From the NCBI GenBank assembly GCA_002269645.1, contig NIVC01000633.1, forward strand, positions 1-64,000: a DNA stretch of 64,000 bases. The letters are read 5' to 3'. Position 1 is the first letter of the stretch, and the number at the start of each line of letters is the position of its first letter. Position numbers and translations under genes: made by a program. Source of the DNA: Macrostomum lignano (Eukaryota). Positions 27,115 through 55,501 of the stretch are shown piece by piece. The notes beneath the pieces are model-generated. The model was not told the DNA's origin, searched no databases, and worked only from the letters and a program-made list of their open reading frames with translations.

Positions 27115-27187
27115 GAGACGGCAGCCACCGATTCGAAGCAGCCGGAGCAGCGGCTCGAGTCCGAGGATACTCAACAGCAGGTTGCAG
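27115..27187 (+). CDS. Candidate exon (ETAATDSKQPEQRLESEDTQQQVA)
   Basis: cgttcgcag acceptor, gca g|gtgagt donor (phase 1), which joins in frame to 28682. Confidence 0.6.
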
Positions 27188-28305: not shown

Positions 28306-28312
28306 AAGACAC

Positions 28313-28357
<45 letters not shown>

Positions 28358-28681: not shown

Positions 28682-28899
28682 TGCTGTGGCCACCCACCCC
28701 ACCCTCCGCTCCCCCGCTCGCCCGCTCGAACCGAACAGCCGCTGAAGAAGAGTCTGGAGGCGAAGACCAGCCGCCGTTGGAATCCGTCGGAGCCGAGGAG
28801 AGCGCAGAGGAGGCCGTTGCCATAGCAACCGAGTCTGCCAACGGCGACGAATTTGGCAGCCGCATGAGCAGCGGCAACGGCAGCGTGGGTCAGGGACAG
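28682..28899 (+). CDS. Candidate acidic exon (VLWPPTPPSAPP...EEESGGEDQ...SVGQGQ)
   Basis: gcgttgcag acceptor (phase 1), cag|gtgagg donor (phase 0), matching the LIM exon at 30587. Confidence 0.6.
28816..28829. promoter_or_regulatory. Canonical X-box (RFX/DAF-19-type) motif GTTGCCATAGCAAC
   Basis: Exact 14-bp match to the RFX palindromic consensus, but it lies inside a predicted exon, so function is unproven. Confidence 0.3.
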
Positions 28900-29730: not shown

Positions 29731-30415
29731 TTCGTGTCAGAAGATCTCTGTCGACTTGTGTCAGAGCCTCTTCGATTTGTGTCAGAGCCTCGTTGTTTTG
29801 TGTAAGATCTTTGTCAATTTTATGTCTGAGTTTCGTCGGTGTATGTCAGAGCTTTGCCGATTTGTGTCAGATCTTTGCCGATTTGTGTCAGGTCTTTGCC
29901 GATTTGGGTCAAATCGGTACCAATTTGTGTCAGATATTTTCCAGTTTGTGTAGATCTTTGCCGATTTGTGTCAGATATTTGTCAATTTTATGTCAGAGCT
30001 TCGTCGGTGTATGTCAGATCTTTGCCGATTTGTGTCAGATCTTTGCCGATTTGTGTCAGGTCTTTGCCGATTTGTGTCGAAGCTTTGCCGATTTGTGTCA
30101 GTTCTTTGCCGATTTGTGTGAGATCTGTGCTGATTTGTGTCAGATATTTTCCAGTTTGTGTCAGATCTTTGCCGATTTGTGTCAGTTCTTTGCCGATTTG
30201 TGTCAGTTCTCTGCTGATTTGTGTCAGATATTTTCCAGTTTGTGTCAGATCTTTGCCGATTTGTGTCAGATATTTTCCAGTTTGTGTGAGATCTGTGCGG
30301 ATATGTGTCCAATATTTGCCAGTTTGTATCAGAAATTCGTCGGTGTGTGTCAGATCTTTGCCGATTTGTGTCAGATCTTCGTCAGCTTGTGTAGGGCTTC
30401 GTCGATTTGTGTCAG
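29731..30415 (+). repeat. Intronic 21-bp minisatellite (gatttgtgtcagatctttgcc)
   Basis: ~32 diverged tandem units, ending ~170 bp before the LIM exon acceptor. Confidence 0.95.
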
Positions 30416-30586: not shown

Positions 30587-30711
30587 GGCGGAGGCGCCGA
30601 CTCCTGCAAAATGTGCCACGGGCGGGTTTACCCAATGGAGCGGCTAACCTCCGATGGCCAGGTGTACCACAAGTCCTGCTACCGCTGCTACAAGTGCAAG
30701 CGGCAGCTCAG
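30587..30711 (+). CDS. LIM domain exon 1 (GGGADSCKMCHGRVYPMERLTSDGQVYHKSCYRCYKCKRQL)
   Basis: ttcgcag acceptor, ctc ag|gtatgg donor (phase 2). C-x2-C-x17-H-x2-C-x2-C-x2-C LIM ligands. The VYPMERL motif is typical of LIMA1/XIRP2/MICAL-type LIMs. Confidence 0.93.
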
Positions 30712-30765
30712 GTATGGCGTTTGGCTGTGCATTTTTCTGGGGGGTTTCTGTTGCTAAGCTGCTAA

Positions 30766-33700
30766 ATAGTGAATGCTAAAGACTCAAGATAGTGAATGCT
30801 GAAGACTCAAGATAGTGAATGCTAAAGACTCAAGATAGTGAATGGTGAAGACTCAAGATAGTGAATGGTGAATACTCAAGATAGTGAATGGTGAATACTC
30901 AAGATAGTGAATGGTGAAGACTCAAGATAGTGAATGGTGAATACTCAAGATAGTGAATGGTGAATACTCAAGATAGTGAATGCTGAAGACTCAAGATAGT
31001 GAATGGTGAAGACTCAAGATAGTGAATGGTGAATACTCAAGATAGTGAATGCTGAAGACTCAAGATAGTGAATGGTGAAGACTCAAGATAGTGAATGGTG
31101 AAGACTCAAGATAGTGAATGGTGAATACTCAAGATAGTGAATGCTGAAGACTCAAGATAGTGAATGCTAAAGACTCAAGATAGTGAATGCTAAAGACTCA
31201 AGATAGTGAATGGTGAAGACTCAATATAGTGAATGGTAAAGATTCAAGATAGTGAATGGTGAAGACTCAAGATAGTGAATGGTGAAGACTCAAGATAGTG
31301 AATGGTGAAGACTCAAGATAGTGAATGGTGAATACTCAAGATAGTGAATGCTGAAGACTCAAGATAGTGAATGCTGAAGACTCAAGATAGTGAATGCTGA
31401 AGACTCAAGATAGTGAATGCTGAAGACTCAAGATAGTGAATGGTGAAGACTCAAGATAGTGAATGGTGAATACTCAAGATAGTGAATGCTGAAGACTCAA
31501 GATAGTGAATGCTGAAGACTCAAGATAGTGAATGGTGAAGACTCAAGATAGTGAATGGTGAATACTCAAGATAGTGAATGGTGAAGACTCAAGATAGTGA
31601 ATGCTAAAGACTCAAGATAGTGAATGCTGAAGACTCAAGATAGTGAATGGTGAAGACTCAAGATAGTGAATGCTGAAGACTCAAGATAGTGAATGGTGAA
31701 TACTCAAGATAGTGAATGGTGAATACTCAAGATAGTGAATGCTGAAGACTCAAGATAGTGAATGGTGAATACTCAAGATAGTGAATGCTGAAGACTCAAG
31801 ATAGTGAATGCTGAAGACTCAAGATAGTGAATGCTGAAGACTCAAGATAGTGAATGCTGAAGACTCAAGATAGTGAATGGTGAAGACTCAAGATAGTGAA
31901 TGCTGAAGACTCAAGATAGTGAATGGTGAAGACTCAAGATAGTGAATGCTGAAGACTCAAGATAGTGAATGGTGAAGACTCAAGATAGTGAATGCTGAAG
32001 ACTCAAGATAGTGAATGCTGAAGACTCAAGATAGTGAATGCTGAAGACTCAAGATAGTGAATGCTGAAGACTCAAGATAGTGAATGCTGAAGACTCAAGA
32101 TAGTGAATGGTGAAGACTCAAGATAGTGAATGGTGAATACTCAAGATAGTGAATGGTGAAGACTCAAGGTAGTGAATGCTGAAGACTCAAGATAGTGAAT
32201 GCTAAAGACTCAAGATAGTGAATGCTGAAGACTCAAGATAGTGAATGGTGAAGACTCAAGATAGTGAATGGTGAAGACTCAAGATAGTGAATGGTGAAGA
32301 CTCAAGATAGTGAATGGTGAAGACTCAAGATAGTGAATGGTGAAGACTCAAGATAGTGAATGGTGAAGACTCAAGATAGTGAATGGTGAAGACTCAAGAT
32401 AGTGAATGGTGAAGACTCAAGATAGTGAATGCTGAAGACTCAAGATAGTGAATGGTGAAGACTCAAGATAGTGAATGGTGAATACTCAAGATAGTGAATG
32501 CTGAAGACTCAAGATAGTGAATGCTGAAGACTCAAGATAGTGAATGCTGAAGACTCAAGATAGTGAATGGTGAAGACTCAAGATAGTGAATGCTGAAGAC
32601 TCAAGATAGTGAATGGTGAATACTCAAGATAGTGAATGCTGAAGACTCAAGATAGTGAATGCTGAAGACTCAAGATAGTGAATGGTGAAGACTCAAGATA
32701 GTGAATGGTGAAGACTCAAGATAGTGAATGCTGAAGACTCAAGATAGTGAATGGTGAATACTCAAGATAGTGAATGCTGAAGACTCAAGATAGTGAATGC
32801 TGAAGACTCAAGATAGTGAATGCTGAAGACTCAAGATAGTGAATGCTGAATACTCAAGATAGTGAATGGTGAAGACTCAAGATAGTGAATGGTGAATACT
32901 CAAGATAGTGAATGCTGAAGACTCAAGATAGTGAATGGTGAAGACTCAAGATAGTGAATGCTGAAGACTCAAGATAGTGAATGCTGAAGACTCAAGATAG
33001 TGAATGCTGAAGACTCAAGATAGTGAATGGTGAAGACTCAAGATAGTGAATGGTGAATACTCAAGATAGTGAATGCTGAAGACTCAAGATAGTGAATGCT
33101 GAAGACTCAAGATAGTGAATGCTGAAGACTCAAGATAGTGAATGGTAAAGACTCAAGATAGTGAATGCTGAAGACTCAAGATAGTGAATTGTGAAGACTC
33201 AAGATAGTGAATGCTGAAGACTCAAGATAGTGAATGCTGAAGACTCAAGATAGTGAATGCTGAAGACTCAAGATAGTGAATGGTGAAGACTCAAGATAGT
33301 GAATGCTGAAGACTCAAGATAGTGAATGGTGAAGACTCAAGATAGTGAATGCTGAAGACTCAAGATAGTGAATGCTGAAGACTCAAGATAGTGAATGGTG
33401 AAGACTCAAGATAGTGAATGGTGAAGACTCAAGATAGTGAATGGTGAAGACTCAAGATAGTGAATGCTGAAGACTCAAGATAGTGAATGGTGAAGACTCA
33501 AGATAGTGAATGGTGAAGACTCAAGATAGTGAATGCTGAAGACTCAAGATAGTGAATGCTGAAGACTCAAGATAGTGAATGGTGAAGACTCAAGATAGTG
33601 AATGCTGAAGACTCAAGATAGTGAATGGTGAAGACTCAAGATAGTGAATGGTGAAGACTCAAGATAGTGAATGCTGAAGACTCAAGATAGTGAATGCTGA

Positions 33701-36700
33701 AGACTCAAGATAGTGAATGCTGAAGACTCAAGATAGTGAATGGTGAAGACTCAAGATAGTGAATGCTGAAGACTCAAGATAGTGAATGGTGAAGACTCAA
33801 GATAGTGAATGCTGAAGACTCAAGATAGTGAATGCTGAAGACTCAAGATAGTGAATGGTGAAGACTCAAGATAGTGAATGGTGAAGACTCAAGATAGTGA
33901 ATGCTGAAGACTCAAGATAGTGAATGGTGAAGACTCAAGATAGTGAATGCTGAAGACTCAAGATAGTGAATGCTGAAGACTCAAGATAGTGAATGCTGAA
34001 GACTCAAGATAGTGAATGGTGAAGACTCAAGATAGTGAATGGTGAAGACTCAAGATAGTGAATGGTGAAGACTCAAGATAGTGAATGCTGAAGACTCAAG
34101 ATAGTGAATGCTGAAGACTCAAGATAGTGAATGGTGAAGACTCAAGATAGTGAATGCTGAAGACTCAAGATAGTGAATGCTGAAGACTCAAGATAGTGAA
34201 TGCTGAAGACTCAAGATAGTGAATGGTGAAGACTCAAGATAGTGAATGGTGAAGACTCAAGATAGTGAATGCTGAAGACTCAAGATAGTGAATGGTGAAG
34301 ACTCAAGATAGTGAATGGTGAAGACTCAAGATAGTGAATGCTGAAGACTCAAGATAGTGAATGCTGAAGACTCAAGATAGTGAATGCTGAAGACTCAAGA
34401 TAGTGAATGCTGAAGACTCAAGATAGTGAATGGTGAAGACTCAAGATAGTGAATGCTGAAGACTCAAGATAGTGAATGGTGAAGACTCAAGATAGTGAAT
34501 GCTGAAGACTCAAGATAGTGAATGGTGAAGACTCAAGATAGTGAATGCTGAAGACTCAAGATAGTGAATGCTGAAGACTCAAGATAGTGAATGCTGAAGA
34601 CTCAAGATAGTGAATGGTGAAGACTCAAGATAGTGAATGGTGAAGACTCAAGATAGTGAATGCTGAAGACTCAAGATAGTGAATGCTGAAGACTCAAGAT
34701 AGTGAATGCTGAAGACTCAAGATAGTGAATGGAAGACTCAAGATAGTGAATGCTGAAGACTCAAGATAGTGAATGTGAAGACTCAAGATAGTGAATGCTG
34801 AAGACTCAAGATAGTGAATGCTGAAGACTCAAGATAGTGAATGCTGAAGACTCAAGATAGTGAATGGTGAAGACTCAAGATAGTGAATGCTGAAGACTCA
34901 AGATAGTGAATGGTGAAGACTCAAGATAGTGAATGCTGAAGACTCAAGATAGTGAATGCTGAAGACTCAAGATAGTGAATGCTGAAGACTCAAGATAGTG
35001 AATGCTGAAGACTCAAGATAGTGAATGCTGAAGACTCAAGATAGTGAATGCTGAAGACTCAAGATAGTGAATGGTGAAGACTCAAGATAGTGAATGCTGA
35101 AGACTCAAGATAGTGAATGGTGAAGACTCAAGATAGTGAATGCTGAAGACTCAAGATAGTGAATGGTGAAGACTCAAGATAGTGAATGCTGAAGACTCAA
35201 GATAGTGAATGCTGAAGACTCAAGATAGTGAATGCTGAAGACTCAAGATAGTGAATGGTGAAGACTCAAGATAGTGAATGCTGAAGACTCAAGATAGTGA
35301 ATGCTGAAGACTCAAGATAGTGAATGCTGAAGACTCAAGATAGTGAATGCTGAAGACTCAAGATAGTGAATGGTGAAGACTCAAGATAGTGAATGCTGAA
35401 GACTCAAGATAGTGAATGCTGAAGACTCAAGATAGTGAATGCTGAAGACTCAAGATAGTGAATGCTGAAGACTCAAGATAGTGAATGCTGAAGACTCAAG
35501 ATAGTGAATGGTGAAGACTCAAGATAGTGAATGCTGAAGACTCAAGATAGTGAATGCTGAAGACTCAAGATAGTGAATGCTGAAGACTCAAGATAGTGAA
35601 TGCTGAAGACTCAAGATAGTGAATGCTGAAGACTCAAGATAGTGAATGGTGAAGACTCAAGATAGTGAATGGTGAAGACTCAAGATAGTGAATGCTGAAG
35701 ACTCAAGATAGTGAATGCTGAAGACTCAAGATAGTGAATGCTGAAGACTCAAGATAGTGAATGCTGAAGACTCAAGATAGTGAATGCTGAAGACTCAAGA
35801 TAGTGAATGGTGAAGACTCAAGATAGTGAATGGTGAAGACTCAAGATAGTGAATGCTGAAGACTCAAGATAGTGAATGGTGAAGACTCAAGATAGTGAAT
35901 GCTGAAGACTCAAGATAGTGAATGCTGAAGACTCAAGATAGTGAATGCTGAAGACTCAAGATAGTGAATGCTGAAGACTCAAGATAGTGAATGCTGAAGA
36001 CTCAAGATAGTGAATGCTGAAGACTCAAGATAGTGAATGCTGAAGACTCAAGATAGTGAATGCTGAAGACTCAAGATAGTGAATGCTGAAGACTCAAGAT
36101 AGTGAATGGTGAAGACTCAAGATAGTGAATGCTGAAGACTCAAGATAGTGAATGCTGAAGACTCAAGATAGTGAATGCTGAAGACTCAAGATAGTGAATG
36201 CTGAAGACTCAAGATAGTGAATGCTGAAGACTCAAGATAGTGAATGCTGAAGACTCAAGATAGTGAATGCTGAAGACTCAAGATAGTGAATGGTGAAGAC
36301 TCAAGATAGTGAATGCTGAAGACTCAAGATAGTGAATGCTGAAGACTCAAGATAGTGAATGGTGAAGACTCAAGATAGTGAATGCTGAAGACTCAAGATA
36401 GTGAATGCTGAAGACTCAAGATAGTGAATGCTGAAGACTCAAGATAGTGAATGGTGAAGACTCAAGATAGTGAATGCTGAAGACTCAAGATAGTGAATGC
36501 TGAAGACTCAAGATAGTGAATGGTGAAGACTCAAGATAGTGAATGGTGAAGACTCAAGATAGTGAATGCTGAAGACTCAAGATAGTGAATGCTGAAGACT
36601 CAAGATAGTGAATGCTGAAGACTCAAGATAGTGAATGCTGAAGACTCAAGATAGTGAATGGTGAAGACTCAAGATAGTGAATGCTGAAGACTCAAGATAG

Positions 36701-39700
36701 TGAATGCTGAAGACTCAAGATAGTGAATGCTGAAGACTCAAGATAGTGAATGCTGAAGACTCAAGATAGTGAATGCTGAAGACTCAAGATAGTGAATGCT
36801 GAAGACTCAAGATAGTGAATGCTGAAGACTCAAGATAGTGAATGCTGAAGACTCAAGATAGTGAATGCTGAAGACTCAAGATAGTGAATGCTGAAGACTC
36901 AAGATAGTGAATGCTGAAGACTCAAGATAGTGAATGCTGAAGACTCAAGATAGTGAATGGTGAAGACTCAAGATAGTGAATGGTGAAGACTCAAGATAGT
37001 GAATGCTGAAGACTCAAGATAGTGAATGCTGAAGACTCAAGATAGTGAATGCTGAAGACTCAAGATAGTGAATGCTGAAGACTCAAGATAGTGAATGCTG
37101 AAGACTCAAGATAGTGAATGGTGAAGACTCAAGATAGTGAATGCTGAAGACTCAAGATAGTGAATGCTGAAGACTCAAGATAGTGAATGCTGAAGACTCA
37201 AGATAGTGAATGCTGAAGACTCAAGATAGTGAATGGTGAAGACTCAAGATAGTGAATGGTGAAGACTCAAGATAGTGAATGGTGAAGACTCAAGATAGTG
37301 AATGCTGAAGACTCAAGATAGTGAATGCTGAAGACTCAAGATAGTGAATGCTGAAGACTCAAGATAGTGAATGCTGAAGACTCAAGATAGTGAATGGAAG
37401 ACTCAAGATAGTGAATGGTGAAGACTCAAGATAGTGAATGCTGAAGACTCAAGATAGTGAATGCTGAAGACTCAAGATAGTGAATGCTGAAGACTCAAGA
37501 TAGTGAATGCTGAAGACTCAAGATAGTGAATGGTGAAGACTCAAGATAGTGAATGGAAGACTCAAGATAGTGAATGGTGAAGACTCAAGATAGTGAATGC
37601 TGAAGACTCAAGATAGTGAATGCTGAAGACTCAAGATAGTGAATGGTGAAGACTCAAGATAGTGAATGCTGAAGACTCAAGATAGTGAATGCTGAAGACT
37701 CAAGATAGTGAATGCTGAAGACTCAAGATAGTGAATGCTGAAGACTCAAGATAGTGAATGCTGAAGACTCAAGATAGTGAATGGTGAAGACTCAAGATAG
37801 TGAATGCTGAAGACTCAAGATAGTGAATGCTGAAGACTCAAGATAGTGAATGCTGAAGACTCAAGATAGTGAATGCTGAAGACTCAAGATAGTGAATGCT
37901 GAAGACTCAAGATAGTGAATGCTGAAGACTCAAGATAGTGAATGCTGAAGACTCAAGATAGTGAATGCTGAAGACTCAAGATAGTGAATGGTGAAGACTC
38001 AAGATAGTGAATGGTGAAGACTCAAGATAGTGAATGCTGAAGACTCAAGATAGTGAATGCTGAAGACTCAAGATAGTGAATGCTGAAGACTCAAGATAGT
38101 GAATGGAAGACTCAAGATAGTGAATGCTGAAGACTCAAGATAGTGAATGGTGAAGACTCAAGATAGTGAATGCTGAAGACTCAAGATAGTGAATGCTGAA
38201 GACTCAAGATAGTGAATGCTGAAGACTCAAGATAGTGAATGGTGAAGACTCAAGATAGTGAATGCTGAAGACTCAAGATAGTGAATGCTGAAGACTCAAG
38301 ATAGTGAATGCTGAAGACTCAAGATAGTGAATGCTGAAGACTCAAGATAGTGAATGCTGAAGACTCAAGATAGTGAATGCTGAAGACTCAAGATAGTGAA
38401 TGCTGAAGACTCAAGATAGTGAATGCTGAAGACTCAAGATAGTGAATGGTGAAGACTCAAGATAGTGAATGCTGAAGACTCAAGATAGTGAATGCTGAAG
38501 ACTCAAGATAGTGAATGCTGAAGACTCAAGATAGTGAATGGTGAAGACTCAAGATAGTGAATGCTGAAGACTCAAGATAGTGAATGGTGAAGACTCAAGA
38601 TAGTGAATGCTGAAGACTCAAGATAGTGAATGCTGAAGACTCAAGATAGTGAATGCTGAAGACTCAAGATAGTGAATGCTGAAGACTCAAGATAGTGAAT
38701 GGTGAAGACTCAAGATAGTGAATGCTGAAGACTCAAGATAGTGAATGCTGAAGACTCAAGATAGTGAATGCTGAAGACTCAAGATAGTGAATGCTGAAGA
38801 CTCAAGATAGTGAATGGTGAAGACTCAAGATAGTGAATGCTGAAGACTCAAGATAGTGAATGGTGAAGACTCAAGATAGTGAATGGTGAAGACTCAAGAT
38901 AGTGAATGCTGAAGACTCAAGATAGTGAATGCTGAAGACTCAAGATAGTGAATGCTGAAGACTCAAGATAGTGAATGCTGAAGACTCAAGATAGTGAATG
39001 GTGAAGACTCAAGATAGTGAATGGTGAAGACTCAAGATAGTGAATGCTGAAGACTCAAGATAGTGAATGCTGAAGACTCAAGATAGTGAATGGTGAAGAC
39101 TCAAGATAGTGAATGCTGAAGACTCAAGATAGTGAATGCTGAAGACTCAAGATAGTGAATGCTGAAGACTCAAGATAGTGAATGGTGAAGACTCAAGATA
39201 GTGAATGCTGAAGACTCAAGATAGTGAATGCTGAAGACTCAAGATAGTGAATGGTGAAGACTCAAGATAGTGAATGGTGAAGACTCAAGATAGTGAATGC
39301 TGAAGACTCAAGATAGTGAATGCTGAAGACTCAAGATAGTGAATGCTGAAGACTCAAGATAGTGAATGCTGAAGACTCAAGATAGTGAATGGTGAAGACT
39401 CAAGATAGTGAATGCTGAAGACTCAAGATAGTGAATGCTGAAGACTCAAGATAGTGAATGGTGAAGACTCAAGATAGTGAATGCTGAAGACTCAAGATAG
39501 TGAATGCTGAAGACTCAAGATAGTGAATGCTGAAGACTCAAGATAGTGAATGGTGAAGACTCAAGATAGTGAATGCTGAAGACTCAAGATAGTGAATGGT
39601 GAAGACTCAAGATAGTGAATGCTGAAGACTCAAGATAGTGAATGCTGAAGACTCAAGATAGTGAATGCTGAAGACTCAAGATAGTGAATGGAAGACTCAA

Positions 39701-45700: not shown

Positions 45701-48700
45701 TGAATGGTGAAGACTCAAGATAGTGAATGCTGAAGACTCAAGATAGTGAATGCTGAAGACTCAAGATAGTGAATGCTGAAGACTCAAGATAGTGAATGCT
45801 GAAGACTCAAGATAGTGAATGCTGAAGACTCAAGATAGTGAATGCTGAAGACTCAAGATAGTGAATGCTGAAGACTCAAGATAGTGAATGCTGAAGACTC
45901 AAGATAGTGAATGGTGAAGACTCAAGATAGTGAATGCTGAAGACTCAAGATAGTGAATGCTGAAGACTCAAGATAGTGAATGCTGAAGACTCAAGATAGT
46001 GAATGCTGAAGACTCAAGATAGTGAATGCTGAAGACTCAAGATAGTGAATGCTGAAGACTCAAGATAGTGAATGCTGAAGACTCAAGATAGTGAATGCTG
46101 AAGACTCAAGATAGTGAATGCTGAAGACTCAAGATAGTGAATGCTGAAGACTCAAGATAGTGAATGCTGAAGACTCAAGATAGTGAATGCTGAAGACTCA
46201 AGATAGTGAATGCTGAAGACTCAAGATAGTGAATGCTGAAGACTCAAGATAGTGAATGCTGAAGACTCAAGATAGTGAATGCTGAAGACTCAAGATAGTG
46301 AATGCTGAAGACTCAAGATAGTGAATGCTGAAGACTCAAGATAGTGAATGCTGAAGACTCAAGATAGTGAATGCTGAAGACTCAAGATAGTGAATGCTGA
46401 AGACTCAAGATAGTGAATGCTGAAGACTCAAGATAGTGAATGGTGAAGACTCAAGATAGTGAATGCTGAAGACTCAAGATAGTGAATGCTGAAGACTCAA
46501 GATAGTGAATGCTGAAGACTCAAGATAGTGAATGCTGAAGACTCAAGATAGTGAATGCTGAAGACTCAAGATAGTGAATGCTGAAGACTCAAGATAGTGA
46601 ATGCTGAAGACTCAAGATAGTGAATGCTGAAGACTCAAGATAGTGAATGCTGAAGACTCAAGATAGTGAATGCTGAAGACTCAAGATAGTGAATGCTGAA
46701 GACTCAAGATAGTGAATGCTGAAGACTCAAGATAGTGAATGCTGAAGACTCAAGATAGTGAATGCTGAAGACTCAAGATAGTGAATGCTGAAGACTCAAG
46801 ATAGTGAATGCTGAAGACTCAAGATAGTGAATGCTGAAGACTCAAGATAGTGAATGCTGAAGACTCAAGATAGTGAATGCTGAAGACTCAAGATAGTGAA
46901 TGGTGAAGACTCAAGATAGTGAATGCTGAAGACTCAAGATAGTGAATGCTGAAGACTCAAGATAGTGAATGCTGAAGACTCAAGATAGTGAATGCTGAAG
47001 ACTCAAGATAGTGAATGCTGAAGACTCAAGATAGTGAATGCTGAAGACTCAAGATAGTGAATGCTGAAGACTCAAGATAGTGAATGCTGAAGACTCAAGA
47101 TAGTGAATGCTGAAGACTCAAGATAGTGAATGGTGAAGACTCAAGATAGTGAATGCTGAAGACTCAAGATAGTGAATGCTGAAGACTCAAGATAGTGAAT
47201 GCTGAAGACTCAAGATAGTGAATGCTGAAGACTCAAGATAGTGAATGCTGAAGACTCAAGATAGTGAATGCTGAAGACTCAAGATAGTGAATGCTGAAGA
47301 CTCAAGATAGTGAATGCTGAAGACTCAAGATAGTGAATGCTGAAGACTCAAGATAGTGAATGCTGAAGACTCAAGATAGTGAATGCTGAAGACTCAAGAT
47401 AGTGAATGCTGAAGACTCAAGATAGTGAATGCTGAAGACTCAAGATAGTGAATGCTGAAGACTCAAGATAGTGAATGCTGAAGACTCAAGATAGTGAATG
47501 CTGAAGACTCAAGATAGTGAATGCTGAAGACTCAAGATAGTGAATGCTGAAGACTCAAGATAGTGAATGCTGAAGACTCAAGATAGTGAATGGTGAAGAC
47601 TCAAGATAGTGAATGCTGAAGACTCAAGATAGTGAATGCTGAAGACTCAAGATAGTGAATGCTGAAGACTCAAGATAGTGAATGCTGAAGACTCAAGATA
47701 GTGAATGCTGAAGACTCAAGATAGTGAATGCTGAAGACTCAAGATAGTGAATGCTGAAGACTCAAGATAGTGAATGCTGAAGACTCAAGATAGTGAATGC
47801 TGAAGACTCAAGATAGTGAATGCTGAAGACTCAAGATAGTGAATGCTGAAGACTCAAGATAGTGAATGCTGAAGACTCAAGATAGTGAATGCTGAAGACT
47901 CAAGATAGTGAATGCTGAAGACTCAAGATAGTGAATGCTGAAGACTCAAGATAGTGAATGCTGAAGACTCAAGATAGTGAATGCTGAAGACTCAAGATAG
48001 TGAATGCTGAAGACTCAAGATAGTGAATGGTGAAGACTCAAGATAGTGAATGGTGAAGACTCAAGATAGTGAATGCTGAAGACTCAAGATAGTGAATGCT
48101 GAAGACTCAAGATAGTGAATGCTGAAGACTCAAGATAGTGAATGCTGAAGACTCAAGATAGTGAATGCTGAAGACTCAAGATAGTGAATGCTGAAGACTC
48201 AAGATAGTGAATGCTGAAGACTCAAGATAGTGAATGCTGAAGACTCAAGATAGTGAATGCTGAAGACTCAAGATAGTGAATGCTGAAGACTCAAGATAGT
48301 GAATGCTGAAGACTCAAGATAGTGAATGGTGAAGACTCAAGATAGTGAATGCTGAAGACTCAAGATAGTGAATGCTGAAGACTCAAGATAGTGAATGCTG
48401 AAGACTCAAGATAGTGAATGCTGAAGACTCAAGATAGTGAATGCTGAAGACTCAAGATAGTGAATGGTGAAGACTCAAGATAGTGAATGCTGAAGACTCA
48501 AGATAGTGAATGCTGAAGACTCAAGATAGTGAATGCTGAAGACTCAAGATAGTGAATGCTGAAGACTCAAGATAGTGAATGCTGAAGACTCAAGATAGTG
48601 AATGCTGAAGACTCAAGATAGTGAATGGTGAAGACTCAAGATAGTGAATGCTGAAGACTCAAGATAGTGAATGCTGAAGACTCAAGATAGTGAATGCTGA

Positions 48701-51700
48701 AGACTCAAGATAGTGAATGCTGAAGACTCAAGATAGTGAATGGTGAAGACTCAAGATAGTGAATGGTGAAGACTCAAGATAGTGAATGCTGAAGACTCAA
48801 GATAGTGAATGCTGAAGACTCAAGATAGTGAATGCTGAAGACTCAAGATAGTGAATGGTGAAGACTCAAGATAGTGAATGCTGAAGACTCAAGATAGTGA
48901 ATGCTGAAGACTCAAGATAGTGAATGCTGAAGACTCAAGATAGTGAATGCTGAAGACTCAAGATAGTGAATGGTGAAGACTCAAGATAGTGAATGCTGAA
49001 GACTCAAGATAGTGAATGCTGAAGACTCAAGATAGTGAATGGTGAAGACTCAAGATAGTGAATGCTGAAGACTCAAGATAGTGAATGCTGAAGACTCAAG
49101 ATAGTGAATGCTGAAGACTCAAGATAGTGAATGGTGAAGACTCAAGATAGTGAATGCTGAAGACTCAAGATAGTGAATGCTGAAGACTCAAGATAGTGAA
49201 TGCTGAAGACTCAAGATAGTGAATGCTGAAGACTCAAGATAGTGAATGCTGAAGACTCAAGATAGTGAATGCTGAAGACTCAAGATAGTGAATGCTGAAG
49301 ACTCAAGATAGTGAATGCTGAAGACTCAAGATAGTGAATGCTGAAGACTCAAGATAGTGAATGCTGAAGACTCAAGATAGTGAATGCTGAAGACTCAAGA
49401 TAGTGAATGCTGAAGACTCAAGATAGTGAATGGTGAAGACTCAAGATAGTGAATGCTGAAGACTCAAGATAGTGAATGCTGAAGACTCAAGATAGTGAAT
49501 GCTGAAGACTCAAGATAGTGAATGCTGAAGACTCAAGATAGTGAATGCTGAAGACTCAAGATAGTGAATGCTGAAGACTCAAGATAGTGAATGCTGAAGA
49601 CTCAAGATAGTGAATGCTGAAGACTCAAGATAGTGAATGCTGAAGACTCAAGATAGTGAATGCTGAAGACTCAAGATAGTGAATGCTGAAGACTCAAGAT
49701 AGTGAATGCTGAAGACTCAAGATAGTGAATGCTGAAGACTCAAGATAGTGAATGCTGAAGACTCAAGATAGTGAATGCTGAAGACTCAAGATAGTGAATG
49801 CTGAAGACTCAAGATAGTGAATGCTGAAGACTCAAGATAGTGAATGCTGAAGACTCAAGATAGTGAATGGTGAAGACTCAAGATAGTGAATGCTGAAGAC
49901 TCAAGATAGTGAATGCTGAAGACTCAAGATAGTGAATGCTGAAGACTCAAGATAGTGAATGCTGAAGACTCAAGATAGTGAATGCTGAAGACTCAAGATA
50001 GTGAATGCTGAAGACTCAAGATAGTGAATGGTGAAGACTCAAGATAGTGAATGCTGAAGACTCAAGATAGTGAATGCTGAAGACTCAAGATAGTGAATGC
50101 TGAAGACTCAAGATAGTGAATGGTGAAGACTCAAGATAGTGAATGGTGAAGACTCAAGATAGTGAATGGTGAAGACTCAAGATAGTGAATGGTGAAGACT
50201 CAAGATAGTGAATGCTGAAGACTCAAGATAGTGAATGCTGAAGACTCAAGATAGTGAATGCTGAAGACTCAAGATAGTGAATGCTGAAGACTCAAGATAG
50301 TGAATGCTGAAGACTCAAGATAGTGAATGGTGAAGACTCAAGATAGTGAATGGTGAAGACTCAAGATAGTGAATGCTGAAGACTCAAGATAGTGAATGCT
50401 GAAGACTCAAGATAGTGAATGCTGAAGACTCAAGATAGTGAATGCTGAAGACTCAAGATAGTGAATGCTGAAGACTCAAGATAGTGAATGCTGAAGACTC
50501 AAGATAGTGAATGCTGAAGACTCAAGATAGTGAATGCTGAAGACTCAAGATAGTGAATGCTGAAGACTCAAGATAGTGAATGGTGAAGACTCAAGATAGT
50601 GAATGCTGAAGACTCAAGATAGTGAATGCTGAAGACTCAAGATAGTGAATGCTGAAGACTCAAGATAGTGAATGCTGAAGACTCAAGATAGTGAATGGTG
50701 AAGACTCAAGATAGTGAATGCTGAAGACTCAAGATAGTGAATGCTGAAGACTCAAGATAGTGAATGCTGAAGACTCAAGATAGTGAATGCTGAAGACTCA
50801 AGATAGTGAATGCTGAAGACTCAAGATAGTGAATGCTGAAGACTCAAGATAGTGAATGCTGAAGACTCAAGATAGTGAATGCTGAAGACTCAAGATAGTG
50901 AATGCTGAAGACTCAAGATAGTGAATGCTGAAGACTCAAGATAGTGAATGGTGAAGACTCAAGATAGTGAATGCTGAAGACTCAAGATAGTGAATGCTGA
51001 AGACTCAAGATAGTGAATGCTGAAGACTCAAGATAGTGAATGGTGAAGACTCAAGATAGTGAATGCTGAAGACTCAAGATAGTGAATGCTGAAGACTCAA
51101 GATAGTGAATGCTGAAGACTCAAGATAGTGAATGCTGAAGACTCAAGATAGTGAATGGTGAAGACTCAAGATAGTGAATGGTGAAGACTCAAGATAGTGA
51201 ATGCTGAAGACTCAAGATAGTGAATGGTGAAGACTCAAGATAGTGAATGCTGAAGACTCAAGATAGTGAATGCTGAAGACTCAAGATAGTGAATGCTGAA
51301 GACTCAAGATAGTGAATGGTGAAGACTCAAGATAGTGAATGCTGAAGACTCAAGATAGTGAATGCTGAAGACTCAAGATAGTGAATGCTGAAGACTCAAG
51401 ATAGTGAATGGTGAAGACTCAAGATAGTGAATGCTGAAGACTCAAGATAGTGAATGCTGAAGACTCAAGATAGTGAATGCTGAAGACTCAAGATAGTGAA
51501 TGCTGAAGACTCAAGATAGTGAATGCTGAAGACTCAAGATAGTGAATGGTGAAGACTCAAGATAGTGAATGGTGAAGACTCAAGATAGTGAATGGTGAAG
51601 ACTCAAGATAGTGAATGCTGAAGACTCAAGATAGTGAATGGTGAAGACTCAAGATAGTGAATGGTGAAGACTCAAGATAGTGAATGGTGAAGACTCAAGA

Positions 51701-54700
51701 TAGTGAATGCTGAAGACTCAAGATAGTGAATGCTGAAGACTCAAGATAGTGAATGCTGAAGACTCAAGATAGTGAATGCTGAAGACTCAAGATAGTGAAT
51801 GCTGAAGACTCAAGATAGTGAATGCTGAAGACTCAAGATAGTGAATGGTGAAGACTCAAGATAGTGAATGCTGAAGACTCAAGATAGTGAATGCTGAAGA
51901 CTCAAGATAGTGAATGGTGAAGACTCAAGATAGTGAATGCTGAAGACTCAAGATAGTGAATGCTGAAGACTCAAGATAGTGAATGCTGAAGACTCAAGAT
52001 AGTGAATGGTGAAGACTCAAGATAGTGAATGGTGAAGACTCAAGATAGTGAATGCTGAAGACTCAAGATAGTGAATGGTGAAGACTCAAGATAGTGAATG
52101 GTGAAGACTCAAGATAGTGAATGCTGAAGACTCAAGATAGTGAATGGTGAAGACTCAAGATAGTGAATGGTGAAGACTCAAGATAGTGAATGGTGAAGAC
52201 TCAAGATAGTGAATGGTGAAGACTCAAGATAGTGAATGCTGAAGACTCAAGATAGTGAATGCTGAAGACTCAAGATAGTGAATGCTGAAGACTCAAGATA
52301 GTGAATGCTGAAGACTCAAGATAGTGAATGGTGAAGACTCAAGATAGTGAATGCTGAAGACTCAAGATAGTGAATGCTGAAGACTCAAGATAGTGAATGC
52401 TGAAGACTCAAGATAGTGAATGGTGAAGACTCAAGATAGTGAATGCTGAAGACTCAAGATAGTGAATGGTGAAGACTCAAGATAGTGAATGGTGAAGACT
52501 CAAGATAGTGAATGCTGAAGACTCAAGATAGTGAATGCTGAAGACTCAAGATAGTGAATGGTGAAGACTCAAGATAGTGAATGGTGAAGACTCAAGATAG
52601 TGAATGGTGAAGACTCAAGATAGTGAATGCTGAAGACTCAAGATAGTGAATGCTGAAGACTCAAGATAGTGAATGCTGAAGACTCAAGATAGTGAATGCT
52701 GAAGACTCAAGATAGTGAATGGTGAAGACTCAAGATAGTGAATGGTGAAGACTCAAGATAGTGAATGCTGAAGACTCAAGATAGTGAATGCTGAAGACTC
52801 AAGATAGTGAATGGTGAAGACTCAAGATAGTGAATGGTGAAGACTCAAGATAGTGAATGGTGAAGACTCAAGATAGTGAATGGTGAAGACTCAAGATAGT
52901 GAATGGTGAAGACTCAAGATAGTGAATGGTGAAGACTCAAGATAGTGAATGGTGAAGACTCAAGATAGTGAATGCTGAAGACTCAAGATAGTGAATGCTG
53001 AAGACTCAAGATAGTGAATGCTGAAGACTCAAGATAGTGAATGCTGAAGACTCAAGATAGTGAATGGTGAAGACTCAAGATAGTGAATGGTGAAGACTCA
53101 AGATAGTGAATGGTGAAGACTCAAGATAGTGAATGGTGAAGACTCAAGATAGTGAATGGTGAAGACTCAAGATAGTGAATGGTGAAGACTCAAGATAGTG
53201 AATGGTGAAGACTCAAGATAGTGAATGGTGAAGACTCAAGATAGTGAATGCTGAAGACTCAAGATAGTGAATGGTGAATACTCAAGATAGTGAATGCTGA
53301 ATACTCAAGATAGTGAATGGTGAATACTCAAGATAGTGAATGGTGAAGACTCAAGATAGTGAATGGTGAAGACTCAAGATAGTGAATGCTGAAGACTCAA
53401 GATAGTGAATGCTGAAGACTCAAGATAGTGAATGCTGAAGACTCAAGATAGTGAATGCTGAAGACTCAAGATAGTGAATGCTGAAGACTCAAGATAGTGA
53501 ATGCTGAAGACTCAAGATAGTGAATGCTGAAGACTCAAGATAGTGAATGCTGAAGACTCAAGATAGTGAATGGTGAAGACTCAAGATAGTGAATGCTGAA
53601 GACTCAAGATAGTGAATGGTGAAGACTCAAGATAGTGAATGGTGAAGACTCAAGATAGTGAATGGTGAAGACTCAAGATAGTGAATGGTGAAGACTCAAG
53701 ATAGTGAATGGTGAAGACTCAAGATAGTGAATGCTGAAGACTCAAGATAGTGAATGCTGAAGACTCAAGATAGTGAATGCTGAAGACTCAAGATAGTGAA
53801 TGCTGAAGACTCAAGATAGTGAATGCTGAAGACTCAAGATAGTGAATGCTGAAGACTCAAGATAGTGAATGCTGAAGACTCAAGATAGTGAATGGTGAAG
53901 ACTCAAGATAGTGAATGGTGAAGACTCAAGATAGTGAATGGTGAAGACTCAAGATAGTGAATGCTGAAGACTCAAGATAGTGAATGCTGAAGACTCAAGA
54001 TAGTGAATGCTGAAGACTCAAGATAGTGAATGCTGAAGACTCAAGATAGTGAATGCTGAAGACTCAAGATAGTGAATGGTGAAGACTCAAGATAGTGAAT
54101 GCTGAAGACTCAAGATAGTGAATGCTGAAGACTCAAGATAGTGAATGGTGAATACTCAAGATAGTGAATGCTGAAGACTCAAGATAGTGAATGCTAAAGA
54201 CTCAAGATAGTGAATGCTGAATACTCAAGATAGTGAATGGTGAAGACTCAAGATAGTGAATGCTGAAGACTCAAGATAGTGAATGGTGAATACTCAAGAT
54301 AGTGAATGGTGAAGACTCAAGGTAGTGAATGGTGAAGACTCAAGATAGTGAATGCTGAAGACTCAAGATAGTGAATGGTGAAGACTCAAGATAGTGAATG
54401 GTGAAGACTCAAGATAGTGAATGGTGAAGACTCAAGATAGTGAATGGTAAAGACTCAAGATAGTGAATGCTGAAGACTCAAGATAGTGAATGCTGAAGAC
54501 TCAAGATAGTGAATGCTAAAGACTCTAGATAGTGAATGCTGAATACTCAAGATAGTGAATGGTGAAGACTCAAGATAGTGAATGGTGAATACTCAAGATA
54601 GTGAATGCTGAAGACTCAAGATAGTGAATGCTGAAGACTCAAGATAGTGAATGGTGAAGACTCAAGATAGTGAATGGTGAAGACTCAAGATAGTGAATGC

Positions 54701-54847
54701 TGAAGACTCAAGATAGTGAATGCTGAAGACTCAAGATAGTGAATGGTGAATACTCAAGATAGTGAATGCTGAAGACTCAAGATAGTGAATGCTGAAGACT
54801 CAAGATAGTGAATGCTGAAGACTCAAGATAGTGAATGCTGAAGACTC
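30766..54847 (+). repeat. 24-kb intronic satellite, 23-bp unit gctgaagactcaagatagtgaat, ~1047 copies
   Basis: 24,082 bp / 23 bp. The main variant is C/G at unit position 2 (gct/ggt). Stop codons occur in every frame on both strands, consistent with the empty ORF track. Confidence 0.99.
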
Positions 54848-54876
54848 CAGTCTGCTGTCGCACTCCAAAATTTCAG

Positions 54877-54950
54877 CGTCGGCAATTTCGCCATCATGGA
54901 TGACCGGCTGTACTGCCAGCCTCACTACATTGAGCTGTTCCGGCTGAAGG
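54877..54950 (+). CDS. LIM domain exon 2 (SVGNFAIMDDRLYCQPHYIELFRLK)
   Basis: aaatttcag acceptor. AG+C rebuilds the Ser codon. Supplies the final LIM ligands C-x2-H. aag g|gttggt donor. Confidence 0.93.
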
Positions 54951-55038
54951 GTTGGTGAAGCTGAACTGTTGCTCATTAATAGTCTTGAGTTCTGACCCAA
55001 CAGCTTATGGCTCCAACTTGCTACTCTCCCAATTGCAG

Positions 55039-55086
55039 GCAGCTACCGCTTCCACGATTCGGCTGGAGTCCCGGTTAACTCCATAG
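55039..55086 (+). CDS. Exon following the LIM (GSYRFHDSAGVPVNSI)
   Basis: aattgcag acceptor. Gives LFRLKGSY, matching the LF..KGNY tail of EPLIN/Xirp2-type LIMs. ata g|gtttgc donor in phase 1. Confidence 0.8.
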   Translation, partial: AATASTIRLESRLTP

Positions 55087-55364
55087 GTTTGCATGCTGGC
55101 CTAGTTGGCCTCTCGCCTTTTATTACCGATTACCGACTCATACACCTGCCCTAATTGCATGTCTTGAATGAGCATGGGATCAGCTTGGTTCGGATTTTGA
55201 GCTGAGGACAGCTTTTGTTTAAACCGGGACTCCCTCATTCTTAACTGGACACTTTTCAAACTCCTGCAAATTCAGATTGAAAATTCCCTAAATATTCTTT
55301 CTAGCTACTAACTAGGCAAGTAGTTTAATCGCGAATTTATTCTAATCAAAAATTATTGTAGCAG

Positions 55365-55501
55365 GCAGCGGCGACGAGTCCGTTGAGAACGGCGGCGGCT
55401 CTAACGACAGCGGCCACGTGCCCAAGCTCAGCAACATCAAGTCTCGCTTCGAGTCCTTTGAGGAGCAGCCGCCCGCGTCTCCGTCTAAGAGGAAGGAGAA
55501 G
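55365..55501 (+). CDS. Exon (GSGDESVENGGGSNDSGHVPKLSNIKSRFESFEEQPPASPSKRKEK)
   Basis: gtagcag acceptor (phase 1), aag|gtgagg donor (phase 0). Confidence 0.85.

What the first reader, a model, noticed from the sequence alone, without database searches (positions are those of the whole stretch)
30587..54950. A LIM zinc finger split by a 24-kb intron that is 99.7% one 23-bp satellite
Seen: exon 30587-30711 ends ...CYKCKRQL-AG and exon 54877 resumes C-GTC (S-VGNF...YCQPH), rebuilding an intact LIM domain. The 24,165-bp intron has only 54 unique bp after the donor and 29 bp before the acceptor, 83 bp in total, about the size of the next intron (88 bp). Inference: a minimal intron was inflated ~290-fold by in-situ amplification, yet the gene looks intact. 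The spliceosome must therefore pair sites across ~1047 repeats that each carry AG dinucleotides and a GTGAAT donor-like word. Established parallel: satellite-filled giant introns in Drosophila Y-loop genes need dedicated RNA-binding proteins. This may be a comparable system in a different lineage.
Basis: partly seen in the sequence, partly recalled or inferred. Interest (0 to 1): 0.78.

Follow-up and report, generated by a model that had tools for sequence, protein, structure and literature searches.

The report
Hugely expanded minisatellite inside a flatworm intron
One of three copies of a flatworm (Macrostomum lignano) LIM-domain gene has an intron whose usual 23-37-copy minisatellite has grown to about 1,050 copies (24 kb). 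This is an extreme case of something ordinary in this repeat-rich genome, not a new splicing system.

Summary
Exons 30587-30711 and 54877-54950 have GT..AG borders and join into a complete LIM domain (Pfam E=2.3e-14, EPLIN/LIMD2-like). The 24,165-bp gap between them is 99.7% one 23-bp repeat (1,047.9 copies).

The window is Macrostomum lignano assembly Mlig_3_7, contig NIVC01000633.1, positions 1-64000. Two homeologous copies of the gene in the same assembly carry the same repeat in the same intron, but only 37 and 23 copies (introns of 944 and 621 bp). A distant paralog has an intron at the same LIM position filled by an unrelated 21-mer. Almost every long intron examined carries its own minisatellite, and other arrays differ more than 10-fold between copies.

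So this is a copy-specific, roughly 30-45-fold expansion of an existing intronic minisatellite, in a neopolyploid genome where tandem repeats are 15% of the DNA.

The array is 66% purine on the sense strand. It has no pyrimidine run over 4 nt, almost no AG|GT, and only weak donor-like words. Ordinary splicing should cope, and 24 kb is far from Drosophila Y-loop scale.

The annotated junction rests on multi-mapping RNA-seq, so splicing of this copy and the exact array length remain unproven.

The parts
27115..27187 (+). Upstream coding exon of the annotated isoform (ETAATDSKQPEQRLESEDTQQQVA). Acceptor ttcgcag|, donor G|GTGAGT.
   Evidence: matches P0002 = PAA79440.1 residues 24-47 at 100%.
28739..28899 (+). 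Coding exon (…AAEEESGGEDQPP…MSSGNGSVGQGQ). It ends in phase 0 at CAG|GTGAGG. Base 28887 is G here and T in both homeologs, so it is diagnostic for this copy.
29742..30415 (+). 21-bp minisatellite (32 copies) in the intron upstream of LIM exon A. It is present at the same place in the homeologs (35 and 29 copies).
30587..30711 (+). LIM exon A: the first zinc finger and the start of the second (…CKMCHGRVYPMERLTSDGQVYHKSCYRCYKCKRQL + AG).
   Evidence: identical in the nucleotide sequence of both homeologs.
30712..30765 (+). Unique 5' part of the intron (54 bp), including the donor GTATGG. The donor scores 8.6 bits on a rough generic position-weight matrix (PWM).
   Evidence: the same 54 bp are present in L001.
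30766..54847 (+). 23-bp minisatellite array, 1,047.9 copies. Unit A (ATAGTGAATGCTGAAGACTCAAG) occurs 777 times and unit B (GCT>GGT) 217 times, plus 13 rarer variants.
30766..35362 (+). Heterogeneous 5' edge of the array. It has 17-32 non-A units per 50 and holds variants C, E, F, G, H, I, J, K and L.
39955..47000 (+). Homogenised core of the array, with 1-6 non-A units per 50. The longest pure-A run is 57 units and starts at 41379.
51447..54847 (+). Heterogeneous 3' edge of the array, with 22-29 non-A units per 50.
54848..54876 (+). Unique 3' part of the intron (29 bp), with the acceptor ...cgcactccaaaatttcag|.
54877..54950 (+). LIM exon B (C completes Ser, then VGNFAIMDDRLYCQPHYIELFRLK + G). 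Base 54901 is T here and C in both homeologs, so it is a diagnostic SNP 25 nt into exon B.
54951..55038 (+). The next intron, 88 bp, with no repeat.
55039..55086 (+). Exon C (GSYRFHDSAGVPVNSI).
55362..55501 (+). Exon D (AGSGDESVENGGGSNDSGHVPKLSNIKSRFESFEEQPPASPSKRKEK). A NAGNAG alternative acceptor lies at 55365. Diagnostic SNPs are at 55366 and 55483.

Best explanation
The feature is a hyper-expanded intronic minisatellite (a VNTR-type array) in one homeolog of an EPLIN/LIMD2-like LIM-domain gene. The gene is BOX15_Mlig024286g1 of the neopolyploid flatworm Macrostomum lignano, line DV1.

Shown:
- The intron is old and conserved in position.
- Before the homeologs diverged it already held a 23-bp minisatellite. 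The other two copies keep 23 and 37 units.
- In this copy the array is 1,048 units long. Both edges are variant-rich and resemble the short arrays. The core is almost pure unit A.
- Minisatellites specific to each intron fill most long introns of this gene, its homeologs and its paralogs. Their copy numbers change faster than point mutations accumulate.

Inferred:
- The array grew in place by repeated unequal sister-chromatid or homolog exchange, or by replication slippage or restart. This homogenised the centre on unit A.
- The pre-mRNA is still processed by the ordinary spliceosome. The only good donor and the only acceptor with a TTTCAG/pyrimidine context are the real ones. The sense-strand repeat is purine-rich and unstructured, and offers only weak donors and no credible acceptors.
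- Any cost is buffered by two further homeologs with short introns.

No dedicated machinery is needed.
For: Identity of the locus. The window matches NIVC01000633.1 at 59,375 of 59,375 bases.

Homeologs:
- L001 has a 944-bp intron with 37.3 copies. L002 has a 621-bp intron with 23.3 copies.
- Their unique flanks are 96.8-98.6% identical to the window on both sides of the array.
- All three arrays begin with unit E, and the short arrays are A/B mixtures like the window's edges.

Background variability:
- The other arrays of the gene differ by 3.5-fold or less between copies.
- In the paralog, a 33-mer has 9.8 against 111 copies and a 23-mer has 13.1 against 154.2 copies.
- The paralog's intron at the same LIM position is filled by an unrelated 21-mer, 38.3 and 19.3 copies.
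- Minisatellites cover 20-62% of the five loci.
- Tandem and simple repeats are 15% of the genome (PMC5730564). Three subgenomes differ by about 2% in SNPs (PMC10733133).

Gene integrity: 18 synonymous against 7 non-synonymous differences in 1,972 coding nt, and all splice sites are intact.

Decoy sites:
- The array is 66% purine and its longest pyrimidine run is 4 nt.
- AGGT occurs twice. GTAAG and GTGAG do not occur.
- The best donor-like words score 6.9 bits (24 copies), 5.5 bits (219) and 3.7 bits (1,046), against 8.6 bits for the true donor.
- No YAG site has 65% or more pyrimidine upstream.
- The repeat RNA is less structured than all 200 shuffles (z=+5.0).

Assembly realism: the unit map is non-periodic. 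The longest repeated informative block is 19 units, and the longest pure-A run is 57 units, or 1.3 kb.
Against: - No copy-specific RNA evidence is available. The annotated junction could rest entirely on reads from the two short-intron homeologs (STAR multimap 1000).
- No transcript-level contigs exist in the searchable collections.
- The array length comes from one CLR-based contig. The same assembly is reported to contain wrongly expanded or collapsed variants and many chimeric scaffolds (PMC10733133).
- The annotated product of this copy has a frameshifted C-terminal tail. It arises from a C4 against C5 homopolymer in the last exon, which could be real decay rather than a sequencing error.
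- The donor scores use a rough generic matrix that I wrote from general knowledge, not a flatworm-trained model. The true acceptor's pyrimidine content (0.60) is only moderately above the array maximum (0.55).
Confidence: 0.55

Rival explanations
1. The expansion is real but the copy is functionally compromised. The 24-kb repeat intron lowers transcription or splicing efficiency, or the homeolog is already silenced. It persists only because two (or, by dosage, more) short-intron homeologs supply the protein. On this view it is an early step of homeolog loss after whole-genome duplication.
For: - Three subgenomes give redundancy (PMC10733133).
- A 1-bp homopolymer difference shifts the reading frame of the last 86 residues of this copy's annotated product relative to both homeologs.
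- The junction support in the annotation is not copy-specific.
- 243 donor-like ATG|GTGAA(G/T) words score close to some genuine donors of this gene, for example the real donor at 54951 at 2.9 bits.
Against: - Exons are about 99% identical to the homeologs, with mostly synonymous changes.
- All splice sites are intact.
- The frameshift lies in a C-run, a typical PacBio CLR consensus error, inside an exon that is otherwise 647/650 identical.
- If the expansion is recent, decay would leave no sequence trace either way.
Confidence: 0.25
2. The array length is an assembly artefact. The true array in this haplotype is much shorter, or of unknown length. Canu over-extended it or stitched reads through a low-information repeat.
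For: - The assembly is PacBio CLR based.
- PMC10733133 reports incorrectly expanded or collapsed variants and 36% of assembly length in chimeric scaffolds.
- The core has few informative variants (1-6 non-A units per 50).
- The two other copies have arrays under 1 kb.
Against: - Both flanks belong to the same third haplotype. They are equally diverged from L001 and L002 and collinear with them, so this is not a misjoin of different loci.
- The unit map is non-periodic and has no long duplicated blocks (maximum 19 units).
- It shows a smooth, symmetric gradient from heterogeneous edges to a homogeneous centre, plus private variants (C 24 times, the 21-bp D 9 times), as real arrays do.
- The longest featureless stretch is 1.3 kb, well below typical CLR read length.
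- Multi-kb arrays occur in paralog introns too (3.5-3.6 kb).
Confidence: 0.12
3. It is a Y-loop-like system. The satellite intron needs dedicated RNA-binding proteins and a special transcription or splicing programme, as for Drosophila kl-3 and kl-5.
For: The intron is over 99% tandem repeat, and it would be transcribed if the gene is expressed. The unit contains GAAGAC and is purine-rich, so it could bind SR-type proteins. That last point is my speculation and was not tested.
Against: - Scale. Y-loop introns are megabases and take days to transcribe (PMC6508621). 24 kb is an everyday metazoan intron length (my own knowledge).
- Repeat-filled introns are the rule in this genome, so general machinery evidently copes.
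- The array lacks strong decoy sites and recursive-splice AG|GT sites.
Confidence: 0.03

Closest known systems
Large intronic VNTRs of humans, for example the 30-bp CACNA1C intron 3 VNTR (PMC11118589)
   Same: It is a minisatellite with a 20-30-bp unit inside an intron of an expressed gene, expanded in situ from a much smaller state (one unit in chimpanzee). It holds hundreds of units and runs to kilobases. Unit variants are interspersed, a few units dominate, and the 5' end is conserved. Unequal exchange is the proposed mechanism.
   Different: Here the array makes up 99.7% of its intron, with only 83 bp of unique sequence. By my own knowledge the human array occupies only part of a much larger intron; this was not checked in the paper read. 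The comparison here is between homeologs inside one neopolyploid genome, not between individuals. The copy number (about 1,050) exceeds the mean of about 220 units per CACNA1C haplotype (34,172 units in 155 haplotypes).
Satellite-filled gigantic introns of Drosophila Y-loop genes kl-3 and kl-5 (PMC6508621, PMC11207136)
   Same: Introns consist almost wholly of tandem repeats that must be transcribed to express the gene.
   Different: The Drosophila introns are megabase-scale, built of 5-7-bp simple satellites, Y-linked, spermatocyte-specific and dependent on Blanks and Heph. This one is 24 kb with a 23-bp unit, in a gene with two short-intron homeologs. No dedicated factors are indicated.
Genome-wide tandem-repeat load and homeolog divergence of Macrostomum lignano (PMC5730564, PMC10733133)
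   Same: Tandem and simple repeats are 15% of the genome. Three subgenomes have about 2% SNP divergence but over 30% divergence once long insertions are counted. That is exactly the pattern seen between this copy and L001/L002.
   Different: In the parts of those papers that I read, there is no description of intron-specific minisatellites or of this array. The 23-mer sequence is not found in the searchable literature.
EPLIN (LIMA1) and LIMD2 LIM domains (PDB 2d8y, 2lzu), for the host gene
   Same: The LIM domain aligns over its full length with the VYPMERL…H.SC(F/Y)RC…LS(L/V)G…YC(K/Q)PH(F/Y)…LF(K/R).KG(N/S)Y signature (E=2.5e-19 and 5.4e-17).
   Different: The flatworm protein is much larger, Q-rich and low-complexity. 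It carries five G(V/I)(Y/V)E(N/S)xP…(L)P(P)D(V/G)V(R/Q)-like motifs downstream. Orthology was not tested by phylogeny.
Pathogenic intronic repeat expansions (FXN GAA, C9orf72 G4C2, RFC1 AAGGG); cited from my own knowledge
   Same: A copy-specific intronic expansion that could reduce expression or sequester RNA-binding proteins.
   Different: The unit is a 23-mer without a long homopurine mirror repeat or a G-quadruplex motif. The predicted RNA and DNA are unstructured. No phenotype is known.

Membership tests
LIM zinc-binding domain (Pfam PF00412) | C-x2-C-x16-23-H-x2-C-x2-C-x2-C-x16-21-C-x2-(C/H/D) with all eight ligands, matching the profile above the gathering score | tested here: met
   The joined exons give CKMC-x17-HKSC-YR-CYKC-x16-CQPH. 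The Pfam score is 53.8 bits against a cut-off of 22.9, covering profile positions 1-58 of 58. The PDB EPLIN LIM matches at E=2.5e-19.
Spliceosomal GT-AG intron at a conserved position | GT…AG borders, a preserved reading frame across the junction, and the same position in related genes | tested here: met
   The borders are AG|GTATGG … TTTCAG|C, in phase 2. The position is the same in both homeologs and in paralogs P0037 and P0153 (…CNRLL|SVGNF…).
Spliceosomal GT-AG intron at a conserved position | Removal of this particular intron copy from RNA | not testable with these tools
   Annotated models PAA79440.1 and A0A1I8JMK4 join the exons. The annotation pipeline allowed 1,000 multi-mappings, and no transcript contigs are searchable.
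Minisatellite / VNTR | Head-to-tail array of 10-100-bp units | tested here: met
   Period 23, 1,047.9 copies, 98% matches.
Minisatellite / VNTR | Copy-number variation between alleles or copies at the same locus, with interspersed unit variants | tested here: met
   The three copies have 1,047.9, 37.3 and 23.3 units. There are 15 unit variants with a positional gradient.
Classical satellite DNA | A repeat family present in long arrays at many loci or in heterochromatin, making up a measurable share of the genome | not testable with these tools
   The 23-mer occurs only in this intron within the window and in the two homeologous introns. It is absent from the paralog loci. The whole genome could not be scanned.
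Drosophila Y-loop type intron gigantism | Megabase-sized introns | tested here: not met
   The intron is 24,165 bp, against megabases in PMC6508621.
Drosophila Y-loop type intron gigantism | Dedicated RNA-binding proteins required for transcription or processing | not testable with these tools
   No data are available. Repeat-filled introns are widespread in all five loci examined, which argues for general machinery.
Recursively spliced long intron | Internal AG|GT ratchet sites with a polypyrimidine tract | tested here: not met
   AGGT occurs only twice in 24 kb (AAG|GTAGTG in the variants whose first base is G). The longest pyrimidine run is 4 nt.
Triplex / R-loop-forming intronic expansion (FXN-GAA type) | A long homopurine·homopyrimidine mirror repeat | tested here: not met
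   From the unit sequence, the longest purine run is 5 nt (GAAGA). The predicted single-strand DNA MFE is 0 kcal/mol. The positive GC skew (+0.35 to +0.45) could still favour R-loops; this was not tested.

The most novel reading that the evidence does not exclude
The 24-kb, 99.7%-repeat intron is real, and is transcribed and correctly spliced in the same nuclei as homeologs with 0.6- and 0.9-kb versions of the same intron. That would make this locus a natural allelic series in a transgenesis-capable animal, for measuring how tandem-repeat intron length affects transcription, splicing and homeolog expression bias.

More broadly, intron-specific minisatellites of about 20-34 bp may be a systematic, hypermutable component of M. 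lignano introns. If so, their origin, and their role in homeolog divergence after genome duplication, have not been described.
Probability: 0.35. Interest if true: 0.5.

Novelty: new member of a known kind. Interest (0 to 1): 0.3.

Why it matters
The array itself is a curiosity: an extreme tail of ordinary minisatellite instability.

The context gives it modest value. It documents a 30-45-fold, homeolog-specific intron expansion within roughly 2% sequence divergence. It shows that M. lignano introns are routinely built from private minisatellites that change faster than point mutations. It also supplies ready diagnostic SNPs (28887, 54901, 55366, 55483) to ask whether such an expansion alters expression of one homeolog in a young polyploid.

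There is a warning for users of the Mlig_3_7 annotation too. Junctions in duplicated genes are not copy-specific evidence.

Tried and rejected
- **First protein search.** A word-indexed search with the 128-aa joined peptide found nothing. The exhaustive HMMER search then identified the species.
- **Early guesses at the organism.** I first considered a volvocine alga, Drosophila or another insect. These were dropped once UniRef and NCBI names gave Macrostomum lignano.
- **RNA genes.** Rfam and tRNA scans of the window found nothing.
- **Literature search for the 23-mer.** Four sub-words on both strands gave no paper.
- **Copy-specific RNA evidence.** I looked for transcript-derived (Logan) contigs through a second protein search and through contig look-ups. 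Only NCBI genome contigs and UniRef models came back.
- **Wasik et al. 2015 genome paper.** It is not held in the library.
- **Poorly designed literature query.** One query on M. lignano satellites returned irrelevant papers.
- **Dispersed repeat family.** The other 23-bp arrays in the paralog loci are unrelated, at 10-14 of 23 matches in the best rotation. The idea is not supported by the loci available.
- **Assembler loop.** The unit map has no long duplicated blocks.
- **Hairpin-driven instability.** The repeat is less structured than every shuffle.
- **Recursive splicing.** There are no ratchet sites.
- **Collection scans.** I did not scan the metagenome or prokaryote genome collections for the 23-mer, because a flatworm locus is not expected there.
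Full report
**1. What is in the sequence**

The finding's coordinates are exact.
- Exon A (30587-30711) follows ...ttcattcgcag| and ends ...CAGCTCAG|GTATGG.
- Exon B begins at 54877 after ...ccaaaatttcag| and ends at 54950 before GTTGGT.
- Exon A translates to GGGADSCKMCHGRVYPMERLTSDGQVYHKSCYRCYKCKRQL plus two bases. The first base of exon B completes a Ser codon, followed by VGNFAIMDDRLYCQPHYIELFRLKG.
- The joined peptide covers the whole Pfam LIM profile (positions 1-58 of 58, E=2.3e-14). It is most similar to the EPLIN/LIMA1 and LIMD2 LIM domains (2d8y at 2.5e-19, 2lzu at 5.4e-17).
- The intron is 24,165 bp. TRF finds one array at 30766-54847 with period 23, 1,047.9 copies and 98% matches.
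- The array is 99.66% of the intron, leaving 54 + 29 unique bases.
- The 23-mer occurs 1,038 times at up to 3 mismatches, against none in 100 shuffles.
- The next intron is 88 bp.

**2. Anatomy of the array**

Cutting the array at the TAGTGAAT anchor gives 15 unit types:
- A, ATAGTGAATGCTGAAGACTCAAG, 777 copies
- B (GCT>GGT), 217 copies
- C (also GAAGAC>GAATAC), 24 copies
- a 21-bp unit D, 9 copies
- rarer types

Non-A units per 50 units run 32, 28, 21, 17, 11, 15, 10, 14, 4, 1, 1, 6, 2, 3, 3, 11, 7, 11, 22, 29, 23. Both edges are therefore heterogeneous and the core is nearly pure A. This is the usual picture of an array homogenised from the middle.

The longest repeated informative block is 19 units, and the longest featureless run is 57 units, or 1.3 kb. 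Nothing looks like an assembler loop.

The sense strand is 66% purine, with GC skew +0.35 to +0.45 and AT skew +0.29. Six units fold worse than all 200 shuffles as RNA (-9.9 against -25.9±3.2 kcal/mol, z=+5.0). They do not fold at all as DNA.

**3. Whose genome, which gene**

A first word-indexed protein search found nothing. An exhaustive HMMER search with a composite of the window's exons returned near-identical proteins. Their source names are all Macrostomum lignano:
- PAA79440.1, BOX15_Mlig024286g1
- PAA48516.1 and PAA65233.1, BOX15_Mlig011398g1 and g2
- UniRef A0A1I8JMK4

All three models contain the joined junction ...CKRQLSVGNFAIMDD....

Fetching the contig that encodes PAA79440.1 showed that the window is GCA_002269645.1 (assembly Mlig_3_7), contig NIVC01000633.1, positions 1-64000. 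All 59,375 overlapping bases are identical.

The annotated isoform uses these exons:
- 14626-14694
- 27115-27187
- 28739-28899
- 30587-30711
- 54877-54950
- 55039-55086
- 55362-55501
- about 58026-58300
- a last exon beyond the window

A 1,094-codon open frame at 17990-21271 and exons at 60.6-63.2 kb carrying G(V/I)YENxP..LPDVVR motifs are annotated as separate nested models.

**4. The decisive comparison: the other copies**

The same assembly holds two further copies of the gene. In L001 (NIVC01001672.1) the LIM intron is 944 bp with 37.3 copies of the same 23-mer. In L002 (NIVC01004126.1) it is 621 bp with 23.3 copies.

Unique sequence on both sides of the array is 96.8-98.6% identical between the window and L001 or L002. 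L001 and L002 are 98.8-100% identical to each other.

This fits the published picture of three subgenomes, S, L1 and L2. They show about 2% SNP divergence, but over 30% divergence once long insertions are counted (PMC10733133). By elimination the window is probably the S copy. That is an inference.

All three arrays start with unit E. The short arrays are A/B mixtures with B in the majority, like the window's edges.

Every other minisatellite of the gene is conserved in position in all three copies. The copy numbers for window / L001 / L002 are:

| Unit | Window | L001 | L002 |
|---|---|---|---|
| 21-mer | 32 | 35 | 29 |
| 28-mer | 23.5 | 35.6 | 35.6 |
| 22-mer | 30.6 | 51.5 | 61.5 |
| 21-mer | 35 | 16.6 | 15.6 |
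| 20-mer | 20 | 38 | 38 |
| 45-mer | 2.9 | 9.9 | 5.9 |
| **23-mer** | **1,047.9** | **37.3** | **23.3** |

The others vary by 3.5-fold or less. The 23-mer differs 28-45-fold. The immediate ancestor of the 24-kb intron was therefore most likely a 0.6-0.9-kb intron already about 90% minisatellite, not an 83-bp intron.

**5. It is the local norm taken to an extreme**

A paralog only 40% identical (P0037 and P0153) has an intron at exactly the same LIM position (...CNRLL|SVGNF...). That intron is filled by an unrelated 21-mer, TTACAGGTCTGACAGAATGAG, with 38.3 and 19.3 copies.

Across the five loci, minisatellites with period 10 or more and at least 5 copies cover 20-62% of the DNA.

Between the two paralog copies, a 33-mer has 9.8 against 111 copies and a 23-mer has 13.1 against 154.2 copies, giving arrays of 3.5-3.6 kb. 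These 23-mers are unrelated to ours.

Wudarski et al. report simple and tandem repeats as 15% of the genome and a mean intron of 1.1-1.4 kb (PMC5730564). The 24-kb array is about 7 times longer than any other array I saw, but it belongs to the same class.

**6. Is the gene alive, and is the intron spliced?**

Between the window copy and L002, 1,972 aligned coding bases differ at 18 synonymous and 7 non-synonymous sites. LIM exons A-C differ only by one synonymous change, 54901 T/C. All splice sites are intact. The copy has therefore been under purifying selection for most of its separate history.

Against this, the last exon of the annotated model, outside the window, has a C4 run where both homeologs have C5. 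This shifts the final 86 residues. It could be a PacBio CLR homopolymer error or a real lesion.

The annotation that joins the exons is a genome-guided transcriptome. It used STAR with outFilterMultimapNmax 1000, BLAT of de novo transcripts with near-best hits kept, then StringTie and TACO (PMC5730564). The junction on this contig could therefore be supported wholly by reads from the short-intron homeologs.

No transcript-derived contigs are available in the searchable collections. Splicing of this particular copy is therefore unproven.

**7. How it most likely works**

Shown: the array offers poor decoys.
- Each A unit has one GT, ATA|GTGAAT, scoring 3.7 bits on a rough generic donor matrix of my own.
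- B units add ATG|GTGAAG (5.5 bits, 219 copies). C units add ATG|GTGAAT (6.9 bits, 24 copies).
- The true donor, CAG|GTATGG, scores 8.6 bits.
- There is no GTAAG or GTGAG. AGGT occurs twice. The longest pyrimidine run is 4 nt.
- None of the 1,049 YAG sites has 65% or more pyrimidine upstream. A typical one, counted on the unit sequence, has 35%.

Other introns of the same gene carry pyrimidine-rich arrays with more acceptor-like sites. The 24-mer array has 26 such sites and the 28-mer array has 11. Both arrays are also kept in the homeologs, and those copies encode the complete annotated protein P0003.

Inferred: the ordinary spliceosome pairs the one good donor with the one TTTCAG acceptor. 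24 kb adds only minutes of transcription (my own knowledge of elongation rates).

Growth was by unequal exchange or replication slippage/restart within the array. That is the mechanism proposed for the human CACNA1C intron 3 VNTR, which went from one 30-bp unit in chimpanzee to hundreds in humans (PMC11118589). Redundancy from the other homeologs would buffer any cost.

**8. Comparison with the Y-loop model**

Drosophila kl-3 and kl-5 have megabase introns of simple satellites, a transcription programme of about 90 hours, and dedicated proteins Blanks and Heph (PMC6508621). Only one feature is shared: the intron is almost all repeat. The scale criterion is tested here and not met. Dedicated factors cannot be tested. 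The ubiquity of repeat-filled introns in this genome argues for general machinery.

**9. Verdict**

The feature is a new, extreme member of a known kind, an intronic VNTR expansion, in a genome where the kind is commonplace.

The two open points are the true array length and copy-specific splicing. Both can be decided with existing or easily obtained data, using the diagnostic SNPs listed above.

Noticed in passing
window 1-8195 (ORFs 5929-8928, 4689-6020 and 3312-4622, minus strand): The '345-bp satellite' (23.8 copies, 99% identical) is a coding tandem repeat on the minus strand. It encodes cysteine-rich Ephrin_rec_like (PF07699) modules of 115 aa each (E=4e-31). The frame is broken twice. 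The contig begins inside the array, so its true length is unknown.
   Followed up: partly
window 16154-17391, 23422-25095, 27732-28425, 29742-30415, 55545-56179, 57294-57958, 59433-60169, 61134-61534, 61946-62844, 63304-63905; L001, L002, L004, L005: Nearly every long intron of this gene, its homeologs and a paralog carries its own unrelated minisatellite, mostly with 17-34-bp units. The arrays are conserved in position between copies but differ in copy number even where the flanks are 100% identical. These arrays cover 20-62% of the loci.
   Followed up: partly
L004 6423-6739 and 14656-14962 against L005 6457-10085 and 20858-24411: In the paralogous LIM gene, two intronic arrays differ more than 10-fold between copies: a 33-mer with 9.8 against 111 copies, and a 23-mer with 13.1 against 154.2 copies. 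Large homeolog-specific expansions are therefore recurrent.
   Followed up: partly
L003 ~61857 (contig NIVC01000633.1 ~66.48 kb, just outside the window): A C4 against C5 homopolymer difference in the last coding exon gives the annotated product of this copy (PAA79440.1) a frameshifted 86-residue tail relative to both homeologs. The rest of the exon is 647/650 identical. It could be a CLR error or a real frameshift.
   Followed up: partly
window 14626-64000 (and beyond): The annotation nests several 'genes' in one 52-kb transcription unit. These include an 812-aa model on the large Q-rich exon (about 19205-22956) and Mlig033901g3 on exons at 60.6-64.3 kb with five G(V/I)YENxP..LPDVVR-type motifs. 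They are probably alternative or trans-spliced products of one locus.
   Followed up: no
window 55359-55366: There is a NAGNAG tandem acceptor (ttgtag|cag|GC) at the start of exon D. The annotated model uses the upstream AG, which adds one Ala.
   Followed up: no
window 12001-14000: A markedly AT-rich stretch (26% GC) lies inside the first large intron of an otherwise 45-65% GC region. It was not examined.
   Followed up: no
window 41379-41516 (representative of the array core): The repeat transcript is predicted to be unusually unstructured (z=+5.0 against shuffles). It is purine-rich with GAAGAC/GAAUG words, so about 24 kb of open RNA could in principle titrate RNA-binding proteins. This is speculation and was not tested.
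   Followed up: partly
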